Shown here: positions 25,157 to 48,983 of the stretch, one piece after another
Layout of the letters: each line of letters opens with the position of its first letter
Position numbering within the stretch: the stretch's first letter is position 1
From: Haliotis rubra
Lineage: Eukaryota
DNA: 64,000 nt
Assembly: GCF_003918875.1 (NCBI RefSeq)
Contig: NW_025767022.1
Span: forward strand, 682,001 to 746,000
Reading direction: 5' to 3'
Position numbers and translations under genes: made by a program
The notes under the pieces: model-generated
The model's input: the letters and a program-made list of their open reading frames with translations, nothing else
What the model was told of the DNA's origin: nothing
The model's database searches: none

Positions 25157-26756
25157 GGGTTAGGTCCCATACTGCCTACAGTTCCAAACTGCCAACATCC
25201 CAGACTGCCAACCAAAACATTGTAGGCAGCGTGGGAAAAGATGTTTTACCCTGTAGAATAATGGAACAGCCCGAGTATCAACGAAGAAGGGGTGCTTCGT
25301 TTGGAGTAAGGGATAATTAGGGGGATTATATTACTATATATCTGTACATCTACTTCTGTGTATAGTATGTTTTGAGTCTTCTCATCCAATAAAGACTACA
25401 AGACAAGTACAATGATATTGTTGTATTTTGTTCTGGGAAGCAGTTAGCATGCTTATATTGTAACCTCCAAAGCAGGATTAACTTAATCCTATTTGATCAA
25501 GTTGGGTAGGCTTGTTTTAACTATGTTGTTACAGGTTTTGTCTGTCTTTGTCAGATTATGTCGAAAAACCTGGTAAGGACTAAATTGTTGAGAAGATCTC
25601 ATCTTCTCAGTTAATTAAACTCCTAATAAATTAGAAGGGGAACCAACTGTATCCATCACACAATGGCAAATGTTCAACGCGTTCAATTCATCACTTCTCA
25701 AGCAGGAGGACAGCAAGTTTTCTTTGCTGGGTACCGATATCGCCTCAACGTCAGACGACAGACCACAACACATTGGAAGTGTGTACATTCTGAATGCAAA
25801 GGCCGCTGTTCTACACCTGGAGACTTCATGAAATCAACAACACCGCACAACCATGTCCCAGTGGAATCTGAAGATGAGACTCGACTCCTTAGAAGAATGC
25901 GTCAGCGTATAAAGGAGGACGTCACATCCATTCGGCAGCTGTACGATGAAGAGTTGTCTGAGGTTGCTGACCCAGCGTCTGTACGATCGTTCTCGAGTGT
26001 AAATTCCTCCCTCTACCGGCACAGAAGCAAAGTTCTACCAAACCTACCCAATTCTCTAGCTGATGTTCAATTCGAAGGACCATGGACACAGACAAAAGAT
26101 GGACAGCAATTCTTGTGCATTGATGATGGAGACGACGACAAGATACTGGCTTTTGCTTCAGAGGACATGCTCAACTTGCTCCACAGCGCCGACAAGTGGT
26201 ATATGGATGGAACTTTCTATGTTGCACCAGCCCTATGGGACCAGCTGTATGTCATTCACTGTATGGTGAATGGGGATATGTATCCATGTGTGCATGCGCT
26301 GTTGCCAAATCGTACGAGGGCTACCTATGTCAGACTATTCACGTTGTTGAATGATGTTGTTAGGGACAAAGTAAGGGTGAACTTGCGCCTAGTGAAATCC
26401 AGATAGACTTTGAGGTGTCAGCCATCAGGGCAGTGGAGGAAATCTATGAGGATTGTGAAGTGCGTGGATGCTTCTTCCACTTCACTCAGGCTGTGTGGCG
26501 AAATGTGGCTGAGAAAGGACTGACAAACGATTACAAGGACATCCCACAGGTGCAGACCCATGTCAGGAGAGCAGCTGCCCTTCCACTACTTCCACGGGAC
26601 ATGGTGCAGGACACTTGGATCGCTGCCATGGACGAAGGCCCGGAGACAGAGAAGGTCAGGAACTTAAACGACTACGTCACGAGTACATGGATGGACTATG
26701 AGGCACGTTTTCCGGTACGGATCTGGACGCAGTATGGAAATATTGGCCCGCGCTAG
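25157..26756 (+). mobile_element. Mutator-like (FLYWCH-MULE) DNA transposon, right end missing
   Basis: Putative left end GGGTTAGGTCCCATACTGCC with repeated ACTGCC motifs and a local inverted repeat (25166-25180 / 25221-25235), followed by the transposase. No matching right TIR seen; the left boundary is inferred. Confidence 0.65.
25663..26756 (+). pseudogene. FLYWCH zinc finger + MULE transposase, frameshifted and truncated
   Basis: N-terminal GYRY...HWKC...CKGRC...HNH (FLYWCH-type). MULE motifs WYMDGTF...QLYVIH, IDFE and GCFFHFTQAVWR. Frameshift near 26386-26388: restoring one base gives NLRPSEIQIDFEVSAI. Ends at IGPR-stop before the expected TNNxxE motif. Confidence 0.9.
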
Positions 26757-35155: not shown

Positions 35156-36093
35156 CTTGCTTGTTACGCGATGTGTGGCCATTGCTTAGAGCAACGTTAG
35201 AACCAACCGCATAGACGTCATGATCCACCATTACGTCCCTTTCTCACGCCAGGATCTTAATACGAGTTCCAATCCAAGATTCGTCATGATACTGACCCAA
35301 CACCAATAGCTTGTCAGCGCGACGGATTCTTTGGTTTCAACACACCTGTTTAACGCCGGGGCGTCGTTACATAACGGAAACATACTTAAAGAGTTGACCC
35401 AACTCACCCACCGAGCTGGCCAAGAGTATGGAACAACAGCATCTACAGTGAAGATCACGACTAAAGTACTGAGCAATAATGATTGAAGTCGTAATGCAAT
35501 TGAAAACCCACTTACACAATACAGCTAAACCTGCACATTCTACATAACATCTAGAATACGAAGAAGTTGATGTGCTAACGAAAGAAACTTCCTGTTGTAT
35601 GTGTGAAGACTGTGTGTCAACATATCTGTACAAGGGGCTTGCAGGAAATCATGATGCTTATTCTGCATGAACACAAGTCACAGCTAAGATCTCCGTGGTC
35701 TTCAAACAGAGACACACTTTCAGACGTGAAAGAGTTTCATGTACCCTTAAAGAGCAAGGGATGAGGGTACGCGGAAGCGGTTTACATTATACCGATTTTA
35801 TCAGGCACCAAGAAGCATTGGAATTAAGACAGATATGTTAGGTAAATATGCACAATTAATCACTCACTCAATTGCCAGTAACCTGATGACCATTTTTGGC
35901 GAAAGCCATGTTCACAGATAGGATTTTTTTTGTGTTTCAACGTTGTTTGCCTTCACACATACTCGTACCCACTCCAAAAGGCTCTGATGTATAGAGTCTC
36001 ATGTAAAATAAATAACTATTTCCGGGGTTGTGACTGGGTACCAGGTGGGATCACTGGAATTCATCACGTAGGATTTTGTATGTTTATCTGATA

Positions 36094-37603
36094 CTCTCCC
36101 CCCAAAAACCGCATATAGGAATTTAAATTGTATTTTTGTGTTTATTTTGAAACATCTTGTAGGCTTTATGAGTCAATGAAATATAGCGAAATTGCACACT
36201 GGGAATGCAGACTTATCCGTCTTTGGCACCAACTCGAGGAAGGCAGTTTGAGTGTCACATGGAGACGTGTGGTGGCGCTGAAGTCAATACATCGTGTGAC
36301 CACCGTGGGCATCCAGAACTGCACGGCATCGCCTCGGCATCGAACGAATAAGTCTCAGAATCTCGTGTTGCCCAATCGCAGCCCACTCTGCCTGTAGTGC
36401 CTGTACGAGTTGCTGAAGTGTCTGGGGCTGAGGGTTACGGCGTCGCACCCGTCTGTCCAGGGCATCCCACAGATGTTCGATCGGGTTTAAGTCCGGTGAT
36501 CTTGAGGGCCAGGGGAACACATTGATGTTGTGGTTCTGGAGGAAGTCTCTAGTGTGACGTGCTGTGTGGGGCCTGGCATTGTCCTGTTGAAACAACTCCC
36601 TCTGGCGATCAATGATTGGAAGGAGGTGTGGGCGTAAGATTTCGTCACAGTACCGTTGAGCCGTCAGGTTGTCCTGGATCATCACCAAATCACTTCTCCT
36701 TCGGCAGGTGATCGCTCCCCACATCATAACACTCTCTCGGCCGAATCTATCCACCTGGGTAACGCAAGCGTCGGCGAAACGTTCACGTCGACGTCTGTAC
36801 ACCCGCATTCTTCCATCGCGTCGTTCCAACAGAAATCGTGATTCATCACTGAACCAGATTCTACGCCAATTCGGTAGGTTCCAGGCCTGAACACATTCTG
36901 AACTCGATGTCGACGATGTTGTTGTCGAAGCACAGGGCCAAAATAAGGTCTTCTGGCACGTAAACCAGCCTCTCTCAACCTGTTCCTGACGGTCTGTGCA
37001 GAAAGCCTCCTCAATCCGGGTATTTGTCGAGCGGTACTGGTCGCCGTAGCTGTTCGATGACGTAGGTGATGTACCCGGATGTAGCGATCCTGCGCCGCAG
37101 TGGTCGCTCGAGGTCGCCCATTACGAGGGGCATCTGCTACCGAATTCTACCGGCGATATCTCTCCCAGAGCCGTGAAATGGTGCTTTGGTGAACATTCAT
37201 GCGTCGGGCAACTGCACGTTGAGACTGGCCAGCTTCAAGCAAACCAATGGCGATATGACGGTTGGCTTCACTTAGACGTGGCATTTTGCGTTCGTCAACA
37301 TTATTCCAAATACAGTGAATAATCGACAGACAGCGATCAACCTTTTATACCAATCATTGAGACTATCTGATCCCCAACTTTCACGTGCATTACATGTGAA
37401 TTGTGTATTCTGTGACACTACACGCCGAAATTGAAAATCATGCTGTTAAATACGGGTATTTTACGGATGGTGCGTTTTGTTGTGATGTTTCAAAACATAG
37501 GACTCATAAACAGAGCAAAACCTTTTGTAAAATGAATCACGTTTTAATTCATTGCTACATGAAATTGCTAGTATTTTCATGATACGTTTCTTTTTTGGGA
37601 GAG
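36094..37603 (-). mobile_element. Tc1/mariner superfamily transposon (Tc1, DD34E), 1.5 kb
   Basis: TA|CTCTCCCCCCAAAAACCGCAT at the left end and GATACGTTTCTTTTTTGGGAGAG|TA at the right end form imperfect TIRs with TA target sites around a Tc1 transposase. Confidence 0.9.
36284..37284 (-). pseudogene. Tc1-like transposase with a premature stop and a frameshift
   Basis: Starts MPRLSEANRHIAIGLLEAGQSQRAVARRMNVHQSTISRL (paired-like HTH); GRPR motif; FSDES; QDNARPH...WPSRSPDLNPIE with 34 residues between D and E. In-frame TAG at 37147-37149; frameshift near 36885-36900. Confidence 0.95.
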
Positions 37604-45329: not shown

Positions 45330-45972
45330 ACACAGTGTATGGCTACACGACACCTACGTATATATCACAGTGTCACGGAATACTACACATACGTATATAT
45401 CACAGTGTCACGGTATACTATACCTACGTATATATCACAGTGTCACGGGATACTATACCTACGTATATATCACAGTGTCACGGAATACTACACCTGCGTA
45501 TATATCACAGTGTCACTGTATACTATACCGACGTATATATCACAGTGTCACGGAATACTACACTTACGTATATATCACAGTGTCATGGTATACTATACCT
45601 ACGTATATATAACAGTGTCACTGTATACTATACTATACGATACTATACCTACGTATATATAACAGTGTCACAGAATACTACACCTGCGTATATACCACAG
45701 TGTCACTGTATACTATACCGACGTATATATCACAGTGTCACGGAATACTATACCTACGTATATATACCTACAGTGTCATGGTATACTATACCGACGTATA
45801 TATCACAGTGTCACTGTATACTATACCTACGTATATATCACAGTGTCACTGTATACTATACCGACGTATATATCACAGTGTCACGGAATACTATACCGAC
45901 GTATATATCACAGTGTAACGGTATACTATACCGACGTATATATCACAGTGTCACGGTATACTATACCGACGT
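45330..45972. repeat. Minisatellite, 35-bp unit, left part (~18 copies)
   Basis: ATATATCACAGTGTCACGGTATACTATACCKACGT; 35-aa periodicity in the ORF track. Confidence 0.95.
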
Positions 45973-46720
45973 TACCCACGTGGTCAACGTATGGGTAGTT
46001 GCATACTAATCTCGTACGTCACACGAGTGTCGTATCGCGTTGACCTGTGTCGTAACGACTTGACCTGAGATTCTAACGATTTGATTGGATAACCGATGAC
46101 CTCTCAATTAGGTCACATTCTGACGTAACTATTTTTTCATTCATACCAAACACGTGAATTCATTCATTCTACAACTTAAATGCATTGTGGGAATGTAAAC
46201 ATCGCGAACGTTGCTGTGTCGCTGTTTAATTGTGAGTCGAACAGAGACATTATATCCGTCGAAAAACGTAAACGCAATGTTTCCACTAGTGATGTTAGCC
46301 GAATGAAGCAACTGCAAACATAGAAACGGGGTGCTACGGAGTAGTTTACTGTAAAAGGCTGTACGAGGCGATGACAACTGACATGCATCGTGACGTCGGT
46401 TACCAAGGCAGTGACGTCATTACATTGTGACGTCATGCAAATATTGGACTACAGTACAAAACTCTTCCGCAACCTCTTTATGAAACCGTTTTCGGTTTGA
46501 AACCAAAATATTAACAAAAATACGCTATTTTGTCAATTTAATGCATGTAAGACGTGGTTAATAAATAAAATACCACACTCGGTCTCATTACATACGAATT
46601 ATACGAAACTCGTGACCTTTCTATGTTATCTGACCTCGCTTTCGCTCGGTCAGATACCATAGGAAGGACACTCGTTTCGTATAATTCGTATGTAATGAGA
46701 CCTCGTGTAGTATTCTCTAT
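45973..46720. mobile_element. 748-bp non-autonomous insertion without TIRs or TSD, with a long subterminal hairpin (Crypton- or Helitron-like; class uncertain)
   Basis: Interrupts the 35-bp array in register (...ATACCGACGT | insert | ATATATCACAG...). Small hairpin at the left end (TACCCACGT...ACGTATGGGTA). Hairpin with 71-bp arms at 46569-46714. Confidence 0.8.
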
Positions 46721-46932
46721 ATATATCACAGTGTCACTGTATACTATAGCGTCGTATATATCACAGTGTCACGGAAAAATATACCGACGTATATATCACA
46801 GTGTCACGGTATACTATACCGACGTATATATCACAGTGTCACGGTATACTACACATACGTATATATCGCAGTGTCACGGTATATAATACATACTTTTATA
46901 TCACAGTGTCGGGATACAATATACCTACGTAT
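46721..46932. repeat. Minisatellite, 35-bp unit, right part (~6 copies, decaying)
   Basis: The unit of 45330-45972 resumes after the insertion. Confidence 0.9.
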
Positions 46933-48983
46933 CTAAGGCTGTGTCAGGGTACACTGTACATCCGTATCTAACACATTGCCTGGGTACACTGTACAGTCGT
47001 ATCTTACACAGGATTATCACTAGCGGTATTCAGGTCCGAGGTCATGCCGATTCTCTCCCTACATGTGTCAGTCTCCGCCAGAGGGCAGGCCACTTAAGTG
47101 TGGAGGTCAAGTTTTGCTATCGAGGGTTCAACGTTATTGATTGCTAACGAGGTGTGGCCATAAACCGCGAGACTTGCGTTTCAAGTATTAATGCTGTCTC
47201 TAACGAGACGGAACCAGTTTTAAGCGTTTTCCTGACTACTAGAGCAAATATTTGGCCGACGTGAAGTGAAAACTTGTTATTGGTAAGACATTTTGACGAG
47301 AGTATTGAATGTATTTATATCTCTCAAGATGACAAATTTGTGGCAATTAGTTGGGTTTGTTCTTCAAATAACTCAACGCCTTTCCTTGTCTTGGAATCGA
47401 TATATTTGAGGTGATTGCGGCGTGATGGTGGGTTTGTCGTACGGGAAATGTGTTGTTTTGATCTTATCTTAACAACATAACCTGCCTTTACACAGGGAAT
47501 GTTCTTATTTTAACTTCCAGAAGTTTAAAGTATCTTGTAAGTGAGTTCTGATTGCGGTCATGAAGAAATCTGCTGAATGTTTATCACTTCACGCTATCGG
47601 CCAAGAAATATAGCGCACTCCCAGCACAAGTATCAGTCTAAATAAGATATGATGGATTACTCTAAGAATAGATCTTCCATAAAACTCGCATGACTCACAT
47701 GGATAACCAGCTCCACTGCATCGCATGCTACGTTCGCCACACAATCTCCGTACAGGCTGTTTGATCATGAGTGAATGAGTTATCGTTAAGAGGAGCTTGG
47801 GAAAAAATCATGTACATGTGCACATAAAATGTTATGCAGCGATTCCTGACCAACCCAAGCGTGTAAACGCAAAATTGAAAACCTAATGAAATGTAGTACC
47901 TATGACCATGTGCTTATTTACAAACACAGCATTAGCTGAGACGAACAGTTTCTTTAACAATGCACCTGCCATGCATGGCTGAGCTGAACACAAGCCTTCA
48001 TCATAAACCTTTGAGACCTCTCAGGTTTTATAAATTCAGGTTTTGACAATTTAGAGTACATGATACATTTGACAATTCACATTTGCAAGGCACATTGACG
48101 GGAACGTTGCAAGATGCCGAGATGTATGTGTCTCTTTGTTCCAGTATCAGAGATGGACCAGCAACTCCAGGTACCAGGACGTGGCGAGTAAAATGGGGTG
48201 TGCCAATCTTTAGCCAATTTCCTCAACATTACTTCTTATGTCTTCTATAGGGGCGACTTTGTATGATAGAGTGTCACAGTCATCCTATTCCTTATTACTT
48301 GAAAATCACTTAGTACCAGAAGCAACTGATCAACAATATGTTTACTGTATCCCAGCGTGACACCTTACTGTACCAGAAAGTGATGCTGAACCAACCCGTT
48401 GGACACTTTGGTAAAATCAGGATGGCAAACCGAAACCTTCATTTAGAAGGCTACAAGATTCTGACACGGTTAAGGAGCGCGACCCCACAATAGTGTGTCA
48501 GTCAGGAAGTCAACAGGTTTTCCTACAGCTATCGCTATCCTGCTATAGCTACTGTTTCTTTTCTTTTTACTTCTTGTCTTGCAACTACTCACACGAATGA
48601 TAATCACCCCCATCCGACTGAATCTAACACGTCTACTGTGAGTGTGCACTCAGCAATAGTCGATGGCCAAAAGGTGTCAAAGTTGATCTGATTAAGACCG
48701 CAGTGCTGTATTGGCAGAGAGCAGGTTAGACCGGATAACCAAGGCTGAACTTAGGTGTCCAAAGCTGTTTGAAGTTGCAGTGACAAAAAGATTGCGTAAA
48801 GGACTCTGGCAGATATATCGGCCCACAGATAATGAATTGTCTGTCTACTGCATCCAGACACGCATGCACCTTCCGCAACCGCTTGCCGGCGTAGCGCATC
48901 TCATACAACCTAACGTTTGATGGAGACAGGATTTGGAATCTGTTGTACTTTCCTGACAACATCCGACATACATGTAAAAGCCT

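What the first reader, a model, noticed from the sequence alone, without database searches (positions are those of the whole stretch)
46569..46714. Strand-specific 146-nt hairpin with three tandem G.A motifs and a GCGAAAGC loop at the end of a TSD-less mobile element
Seen in sequence: two 71-nt arms around a 4-nt loop. Apart from four scattered single mismatches, the arms disagree at three sites, each in the same way: 5'-CTCG-3' faces 5'-CTCG-3' (ACACTCGG/ACCTCGTG, AACTCGTG/CACTCGTT, ACCTCGC/GCTCGGT). On the + strand these are TC/TC loops. On the - strand they are 5'-CGAG-3'/5'-CGAG-3', and the apex reads GC-GAAA-GC. Established knowledge: tandem sheared G.A pairs in a CGAG context are stabilising; d(GCGAAAGC) is an unusually stable DNA mini-hairpin, and GAAA is a GNRA tetraloop in RNA. 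Inference: the same mismatch three times is unlikely to be random decay, so the structure appears selected to fold on one single strand only. This parallels folded ssDNA sites such as integron attC (tyrosine recombinase) or HUH-transposase end hairpins, and suggests a eukaryotic element mobilised through a folded single-stranded intermediate.
Basis: partly seen in the sequence, partly recalled or inferred. Interest (0 to 1): 0.85.

Follow-up and report, generated by a model that had tools for sequence, protein, structure and literature searches.

The report
Abalone rolling-circle transposon end hairpin
The 146-base hairpin is real and its odd repeated mismatch is not chance, but it is the unusually long end hairpin of a very abundant, non-coding Helitron-like (Helentron-type) transposon of abalones, a known kind of element; whether the mismatch pattern picks the strand that moves is untested.

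Summary
Window 46569-46714 is a 71+4+71 palindrome. It has three CTCG-facing-CTCG sites, four single mismatches and a TTTC loop, which reads GCGAAAGC on the minus strand. Random decay of a perfect palindrome does not give this pattern (0 of 300,000 simulations).

It is the 3' end of a 748-bp insertion (45973-46720) that splits a 35-bp minisatellite in phase, without target duplication. The anatomy fits a non-autonomous Helentron/HLE2 element (HINE):
- a 5' terminal inverted repeat with a nearby local inverted repeat;
- a matching 3' subterminal repeat just before the hairpin;
- T on both flanks.

Public-run contigs of four abalone-like organisms hold thousands of contig pieces with the same ends. 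No majority variant was listed at the six CTCG sites. Two of the four single mismatches are private to this copy or its subfamily.

Both strands fold very stably, so "folds on one strand only" is overstated. The asymmetry is real and favours the minus strand. Its function in strand choice is inferred only. I could fetch no individual copies, so covariation is untested, and no autonomous partner was found.

The scan noted a "Helentron-like tail" elsewhere in this genome; I did not check whether it is the same family.

The parts
45335..45972 (.). Left part of the 35-bp minisatellite that served as target; ends ...ACCGACGT
   Evidence: (family D8)
45972..45983 (+). Flanking or terminal T, then the 5' terminal inverted repeat TTACCCACGT(GG); CCACGTGG is itself palindromic
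   Evidence: Copies in four runs all start aligning at 45972 (table 7)
45973..45997 (+). Local inverted repeat next to the 5' repeat: TACCCA ... TGGGTA, 13 nt apart (the 'IR' of HINE/DINE-1 anatomy)
   Evidence: Read; anatomy as in PMC7492417 and PMC4067079
45982..46045 (+). Second 8-bp inverted repeat GGTCAACG / CGTTGACC, predicted to pair (P 0.86)
46027..46067 (+). Short internal tandem repeat, 20 bp x 2
46348..46408 (.). Internal core far more abundant than the rest of the element in organisms C and D. Many copies diverge after 46401/46408
   Evidence: tables 2 and 7
46552..46561 (+). 3' subterminal inverted repeat ACGTGGtTAA: 9 of 10 complementary to the 5' end here, 10 of 10 with the family-majority G at 46558
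   Evidence: 46558 T>G in more than 99% of depth in X1 and X2; panhandle 45976-81 / 46552-57, P about 0.55-0.6
46569..46714 (.). 146-nt 3' palindrome: 71-nt arms, three CTCG/CTCG sites, loop TTTC on + (GAAA on -)
46715..46720 (+). 6-nt 3' tail CTCTAT; copies stop aligning at 46720 or 46724
   Evidence: table 7
46721..46975 (.). Right part of the interrupted 35-bp minisatellite, resuming in phase

Best explanation
The hairpin is the 3'-terminal stem-loop of a 748-bp non-autonomous Helitron-like element of the HLE2/Helentron type (a HINE) that is very abundant in abalone genomes. Shown: the layout is 5' T-TACCCACGTGG repeat plus a local inverted repeat, an internal region, a 3' subterminal repeat ACGTGG(G)TAA complementary to the 5' end, 7 nt, the 146-nt palindrome, then CTCTAT. 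It is inserted in phase in a minisatellite without target duplication. Many copies with the same ends occur in several species. Inferred by analogy with Helraiser: a RepHel (HUH nuclease plus helicase) transposase of an autonomous partner nicks one strand at the 5' end and unwinds it. The folded 3' hairpin then acts as the stop-and-cut signal a few bases before the 3' end. The terminal repeats can pair on the single strand and bring both ends together. A perfect palindrome reads the same on both strands. Here only the loop and the three CGAG/CTCG sites tell the strands apart, so they are the likeliest place where strand or orientation is read. Which strand's fold is the active one is not settled.
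For: Insertion and empty site. Family, shared boundaries at 45972 and 46720/46724, and AT-rich flanks: where 12,700, 8,040, 1,816 and 3,734 contigs were laid in four organisms. Contigs bridging the internal region and the hairpin occur in three organisms (table 8), so the hairpin is an integral part of the element. The family-majority G at 46558 makes a perfect 10-bp terminal inverted repeat. A panhandle is predicted in the single strand. Anatomy matches published HINE/HLE2 descriptions: PMC4067079, PMC7492417, PMC11417382. Helentrons are listed for the gastropods Lottia and Biomphalaria. None of the 40 best-supported variants lies in the first 145 nt or the last 92 nt, and none at the six CTCG sites. 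46620 T>C and 46626 T>G restore pairs in most copies (table 3). The pattern is non-random. Hairpin as terminator, loop identity important and one strand used in Helraiser: PMC4778049 and PMC5876387.
Against: No autonomous partner with Rep/helicase was found or could be searched for. The terminal repeat is 10 bp, slightly below the 11-16 usually quoted. The 3' palindrome is about ten times longer than those described. The minisatellite consensus has a single T at the target, not TT. Only 40 of 266 variants were listed, so minority variants at the CTCG sites cannot be excluded. No individual copies were obtained, so there is no covariation test. No experiment exists on any HLE2 element, so the mechanism rests on analogy with HLE1.
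Confidence: 0.7

Rival explanations
1. Frozen accident. The hairpin is the HINE end signal, or just a passenger, but the three CTCG/CTCG sites and the loop were present by chance in the master copy and are merely inherited, with no role in strand choice.
For: All copies descend from few masters, so a shared consensus does not prove selection. No covariation was shown. Both strands fold about equally by generic parameters. The A>T variant at 46628 appears uncompensated in a subfamily.
Against: Random decay does not produce the pattern. The motif is exactly the one that forms a stable CGAG block, and the apex is exactly the most stable mini-hairpin, a double coincidence. In the variants listed, the termini are the least variable parts of the family.
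Confidence: 0.2
2. First reader's version. The minus strand alone folds, and it is the recombination substrate of a tyrosine recombinase (attC-like or Crypton-like) or of an HUH enzyme acting on that strand.
For: The minus strand carries the three CGAG blocks, the GCGAAAGC apex and a G.T instead of C.A at 46574/46709. It is favoured by 2.6-2.9 kcal/mol with DNA parameters and 9-13 kcal/mol with RNA parameters. Literature gives Tm 76.5 C against about 33 C for the apex alone.
Against: The anatomy is that of HLE2, not Crypton or attC. No recombinase is nearby. In Helraiser the strand used has the hairpin near its 3' end, which is the + strand here. Both strands fold.
Confidence: 0.06
3. RNA-level element. 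Transcripts of the element fold into a long hairpin RNA with a GNRA tetraloop and tandem G.A pairs, and this RNA is processed into small RNAs or bound by a protein.
For: RNA folding energies are -89 kcal/mol (+) and -98 kcal/mol (-). There is a weak Rfam match to a plant miRNA precursor model, MIR6217, at 44 bits.
Against: The Rfam score is far below the gathering score of 110 and reflects only a long stem. No reliable RNA run holds the element (one search lists guessed kinds only). The position and terminal repeats are explained by transposition.
Confidence: 0.05

Closest known systems
HINE / DINE-1-like non-autonomous Helentrons (HLE2), e.g. Cg_HINE of the Pacific oyster, mite HINE-Mo, Drosophila DINE-1
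   Same: A short inverted repeat at the 5' end with a nearby complementary IR; a matching subterminal repeat near the 3' end followed by a palindrome; T-rich flanks; no target duplication; high copy number; association with tandem repeats.
   Different: The 3' palindrome is 146 nt, against stems of 5-10 bp and a 60-bp right module. The 3' repeat therefore lies about 160 nt from the end instead of 38-60. The stem carries three identical tandem mismatch sites. The inverted repeat is 10 bp. No partner was identified.
Helraiser / canonical Helitron (HLE1) right terminal hairpin
   Same: A hairpin a few bases before the 3' end of a rolling-circle transposon. In Helraiser it works as terminator, its loop matters more than its stem, and only one strand is used.
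   Different: HLE1 ends are 5'-TC and CTRR-3', the target is A^T, the hairpin is about 19 bp, and there are no terminal inverted repeats. None of these is met here.
Integron attC sites and IS200/IS605 end hairpins
   Same: Imperfect palindromes in which unpaired or mismatched bases on the folded single strand tell the enzyme which strand to use (my own knowledge of these systems).
   Different: Bacterial; different enzymes for attC; no sequence or architectural relation; nothing was tested here.
CGAG block and GCGAAAGC mini-hairpin DNA
   Same: CGAG facing CGAG forms C:G, sheared G:A, A:G, G:C (NMR, PMC10085684). GCGAAAGC is the most stable mini-hairpin and occurs at priming sites of single-stranded phage origins (PMC13037366).
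   Different: Those are structural motifs, not mobile-element parts. Their formation in this hairpin is predicted, not measured.

Membership tests
HLE2 / Helentron non-autonomous element (HINE) | Short (11-16 bp) terminal or subterminal inverted repeats | tested here: met
   TTACCCACGT (45972-81) against ACGTGGtTAA (46552-61): 9 of 10 in this copy, 10 of 10 with the family-majority G at 46558. One base shorter than the usual minimum.
HLE2 / Helentron non-autonomous element (HINE) | [quoted passage not shown] | tested here: met
   The hairpin 46569-46714 starts 7 nt after the repeat and ends 6 nt before the element end. It is much longer than described.
HLE2 / Helentron non-autonomous element (HINE) | Inverted repeat close to, and complementary to, the 5' repeat | tested here: met
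   TACCCA (45973-78) and TGGGTA (45992-97).
HLE2 / Helentron non-autonomous element (HINE) | Insertion between T and T, no target site duplication | tested here: inconclusive
   No duplication. T at 45972 and T at 46720 are shared by copies in four runs. But the minisatellite consensus has one T at this point, so T^T against T^A cannot be told.
HLE2 / Helentron non-autonomous element (HINE) | Multi-copy family with shared ends and unrelated flanks | tested here: met
   thousands of contigs, loose ends piling up at 45972 and 46720/46724, flank agreement 0.35-0.45.
HLE2 / Helentron non-autonomous element (HINE) | Autonomous partner with the same ends encoding Rep/helicase (with or without endonuclease) | not testable with these tools
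   No abalone genome could be searched. The window holds no such ORF.
Canonical Helitron (HLE1) | 5'-TC, 3'-CTRR, insertion between A and T | tested here: not met
   The element starts T/TACCC, ends CTCTAT, and the target is ACGT^ATAT.
MITE / foldback element of a cut-and-paste superfamily | Terminal inverted repeats at both extreme ends plus a target site duplication | tested here: not met
   No duplication. The right repeat is about 160 nt inside the element, and the palindrome is at one end only.
attC-like or Crypton (tyrosine recombinase) site | Associated tyrosine recombinase; conserved core sites | not tested
   No recombinase ORF in the window. The family anatomy is explained otherwise.
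miRNA precursor (Rfam) | Score at or above a family's gathering threshold | tested here: not met
   Only MIR6217, 44.3 bits against 110.

The most novel reading that the evidence does not exclude
The three CGAG blocks and the GCGAAAGC apex are a selected strand-marking device of a eukaryotic rolling-circle transposon. They make one strand of an otherwise symmetric 146-nt palindrome fold into a hyperstable hairpin. This either tells the RepHel transposase which strand and direction to process, or, like the mini-hairpins at single-stranded phage origins, resists single-strand binding proteins and primes second-strand synthesis of the excised strand. It would be the first structural strand-choice signal described for Helentrons.
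Probability: 0.2. Interest if true: 0.7.

Novelty: new member of a known kind. Interest (0 to 1): 0.4.

Why it matters
Nothing is known experimentally about how Helentron-type (HLE2) elements move. All mechanism comes from one bat Helitron of the other group. This abalone family has a very long 3' hairpin whose only strand-specific features are three identical, well-characterised non-Watson-Crick blocks and a well-characterised loop. That gives a clean handle: swapping the blocks to the other strand, or repairing them, tests directly which strand is read and whether the fold matters. Otherwise it is an ordinary, very abundant non-autonomous transposon that should be masked in abalone genome annotation.

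Tried and rejected
Individual copies could not be obtained.
- The window holds a single copy, and no second GCGAAAGC hairpin or terminal repeat.
- Spurious ORFs across the hairpin and the element body found no predicted proteins in either protein collection, so contigs could not be fetched that way.
- Exact-pattern scans of metagenome, viral and prokaryotic genome collections gave only unrelated bacterial matches.
- Four ENA contig stretches reached through relatives of the window's Tc1 transposase (L007, L021-L023, 61 kb) contain no copy.
- The table of oyster HINE substructures is illegible in the stored supplement, so terminal sequences could not be compared.
- The Rfam hit to MIR6217 was rejected as a generic long-stem match.
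- A canonical Helitron, a cut-and-paste MITE and a separate foldback insertion at the element's end were rejected. The ends do not fit, and contigs bridge the element body and the hairpin in three organisms.

Full report
**1. The observation.** Window 46569-46714 reads as two 71-nt arms around the loop TTTC. Sixty-one of the 71 arm positions are Watson-Crick.

The ten exceptions are three tandem sites and four single mismatches.
- At each tandem site CTCG faces CTCG: 46578-81/46702-05, 46609-12/46671-74 and 46635-38/46645-48. That gives T.C/C.T on the + strand and G.A/A.G on the - strand.
- The single mismatches are 46574/46709 C.A, 46615/46668 A.A, 46620/46663 T.G and 46626/46657 T.C.

The + strand of the hairpin holds six CTCG and no CGAG. 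The rest of the element holds one CTCG and two CGAG. The apex on the - strand is GCGAAAGC. As single-stranded DNA both strands fold into the full hairpin: -53.6 kcal/mol (+) and -56.5 kcal/mol (-), z about -15, with no shuffle as good.

I simulated a perfect palindrome decaying to ten mismatched positions. It gave three isolated tandem sites in 3.6% of trials, but never three self-symmetric ones (0 of 300,000). With the requirement of one shared 4-mer, my analytic estimate is about 1e-8.

**2. Context.** A 35-bp minisatellite runs from 45335 to 45972 and from 46721 to 46975. It breaks after ...ACCGACGT and resumes in phase with ATATATCAC. So 45973-46720 is a 748-bp insertion without target duplication, as another first-stage note on this window says. 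The window holds no second copy.

**3. The family.** A run search found the element in at least seven coded organisms. Other notes of the scan name the genome as an abalone, Haliotis rubra; I did not verify this.

I laid Logan contigs of four organisms on 45943-46750.
- 12,700, 8,040, 1,816 and 3,734 contigs fit.
- Summed depth is three orders of magnitude above the flanks.
- Loose ends pile up at 45972 on the left and at 46720/46724 on the right.
- The flanks are unrelated and AT-rich.
- Contigs bridge the internal region and the hairpin in three organisms, so the hairpin belongs to the element.

Among the 40 best-supported differences (226 more were not shown), none lies in the first 145 nt or the last 92 nt. 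None lies at a CTCG site.

Three listed differences lie in the hairpin. 46620 T>C (nearly all copies) and 46626 T>G (35-92%) restore Watson-Crick pairs. So two of the four single mismatches are private to this copy or its subfamily. The third, 46628 A>T, is a subfamily variant with no listed compensating change.

The three tandem sites, and apparently 46574/46709 and 46615/46668, are therefore family-level features in four species. This rests on a truncated list and is not proof of selection.

**4. What it is.** At 46558 nearly all copies have G where this copy has T. With G, 46552-46561 reads ACGTGGGTAA. That is the exact reverse complement of the first ten bases, TTACCCACGT (45972-45981).

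Other terminal features:
- The 5' repeat contains the palindrome CCACGTGG.
- It is followed after 13 nt by TGGGTA, complementary to TACCCA.
- The 3' repeat is followed after 7 nt by the hairpin, then by CTCTAT.
- Folding the whole + strand predicts a panhandle between the two repeats (P about 0.55-0.6 even with the T), with the hairpin beside it.

This is the published anatomy of Helentron-type Helitron-like elements (HLE2) and their non-autonomous HINE/DINE-1 derivatives. Those have short terminal inverted repeats, an IR near the 5' repeat and a stem-loop after the right repeat. They prefer T-T insertion and make no duplication (PMC4067079; PMC7492417; PMC11417382). Helentrons are listed for oysters, Lottia and Biomphalaria.

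Canonical Helitron marks (5'-TC, CTRR-3', A^T target) are absent.

Three things are unusual here:
- the length of the palindrome, 146 nt against stems of 5-10 bp;
- the resulting distance of the right repeat from the end;
- the repeated mismatch.

No autonomous partner could be sought with the tools.

**5. The strand asymmetry.** The chemistry is documented. Two CGAG tetranucleotides facing each other form a 'CGAG block' of C:G, sheared G:A, A:G, G:C in stable DNA hairpins (PMC10085684). Tandem GA-AG has exceptional stacking, while C.T is among the weakest mismatches (PMC8163305). d(GCGAAAGC) melts at 76.5 C against 33 C for GCTTTTGC, and occurs at priming sites of single-stranded phage origins (PMC13037366).

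Generic nearest-neighbour parameters favour the - strand by 2.6-2.9 kcal/mol as DNA and by 9-13 kcal/mol as RNA. The DNA figure probably understates the difference, which is my inference. Still, 61 Watson-Crick pairs form on either strand, so both fold. The claim of one-strand-only folding is overstated.

**6. How it most likely works.** In Helraiser, the only Helitron studied at the bench, the transposase nicks the top strand at the 5' end and unwinds 5' to 3'. It uses the hairpin near the 3' end as a terminator. Changing the loop abolishes the effect while changing the stem does not, and only the top strand forms and cleaves junctions (PMC4778049, PMC5876387).

By analogy, the abalone hairpin is the stop-and-cut signal of a RepHel transposase. 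The terminal repeats bring the two ends together on the single strand.

A perfect palindrome has the same sequence on both strands. So the loop and the three sites are the only marks that distinguish the strands, which is a reason for them to be kept.

By the Helraiser precedent the transferred strand is the + strand, which carries the weak T.C side. The optimal stability motifs sit on the - strand. Two readings remain:
- The enzyme reads flexible pyrimidine bubbles on the transferred strand.
- The hyperstable fold of the other strand matters, for example to keep the duplex open, to stall synthesis or to prime it.

I cannot decide between these. All of this section is inference.

**7. Rivals.**
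- A frozen accident of the master copy (0.2). It cannot be excluded without subfamily data.
- A minus-strand recombination site of a tyrosine recombinase (0.06). The anatomy speaks against it.
- An RNA hairpin (0.05). The only support is a sub-threshold Rfam match.

**8. Novelty.** The element is a new member of a known kind. I found no paper on abalone Helentrons in the held library; Repbase and Dfam could not be checked. The long hairpin with CGAG blocks is a curiosity. It makes strand choice in HLE2 transposition testable, but its function is unproven.

**9. Limits.**
- I could not fetch single copies.
- The variant table is truncated.
- Contigs cannot show expression.
- The organism names are coded.

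Noticed in passing
L009:7009-7028, L011:4844-4863, L013:7604-7623, L014:2528-2547, L015:1783-1802, L016:1423-1442, L018:962-981: The exact 20-mer apex of the hairpin (stem GACC, tandem mismatch, GC, four-base loop) occurs in 12 prokaryotic genome contigs and one IMG/VR contig; about one is expected from the size of the collection. In at least seven of them it sits in the same kind of intergenic repeat, next to a CCCTCTCCC-loop-GGGAGAGGG hairpin. No Rfam family covers it. It looks like a recurrent structural module in bacteria, most likely unrelated by descent to the abalone element.
   Followed up: partly
window 46348-46408: A roughly 50-60-nt stretch inside the element is about ten times deeper than the rest in organism D and three to four times deeper in organism C. 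Loose ends lie at 46356 and at 46401/46408. So it is a module shared with other, more abundant repeats, or a recombination point between subfamilies.
   Followed up: no
window 46390-46440: Three copies of GTGACGTC(A), the palindromic CRE/ATF-type octamer, within 50 nt inside the element; possibly a promoter or enhancer carried by the transposon.
   Followed up: no
window 45335-45972 and 46721-46975: A 35-bp minisatellite whose unit contains CACAGTG followed by TCAC; it is the target of the insertion. The window is full of other minisatellites with periods of 13, 29, 36, 39, 43, 44, 52 and 67-77 bp.
   Followed up: no
window 36091-37042 (-): A Tc1/mariner transposase remnant (DDE_3). Its closest relative, at 92.5% DNA identity, is on an ENA contig of sample ERZ25072293 (L007:6445-7410), next to reverse-transcriptase ORFs.
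   Followed up: partly
window 25663-26756 (+): Two adjacent ORFs of 247 and 113 aa. The first has a FLYWCH zinc finger; the pair looks to me like a Mutator-like transposase remnant.
   Followed up: no
run X17: A peat metatranscriptome run holds 14% of the element's sampled words, which is odd for an abalone repeat.
   Followed up: no
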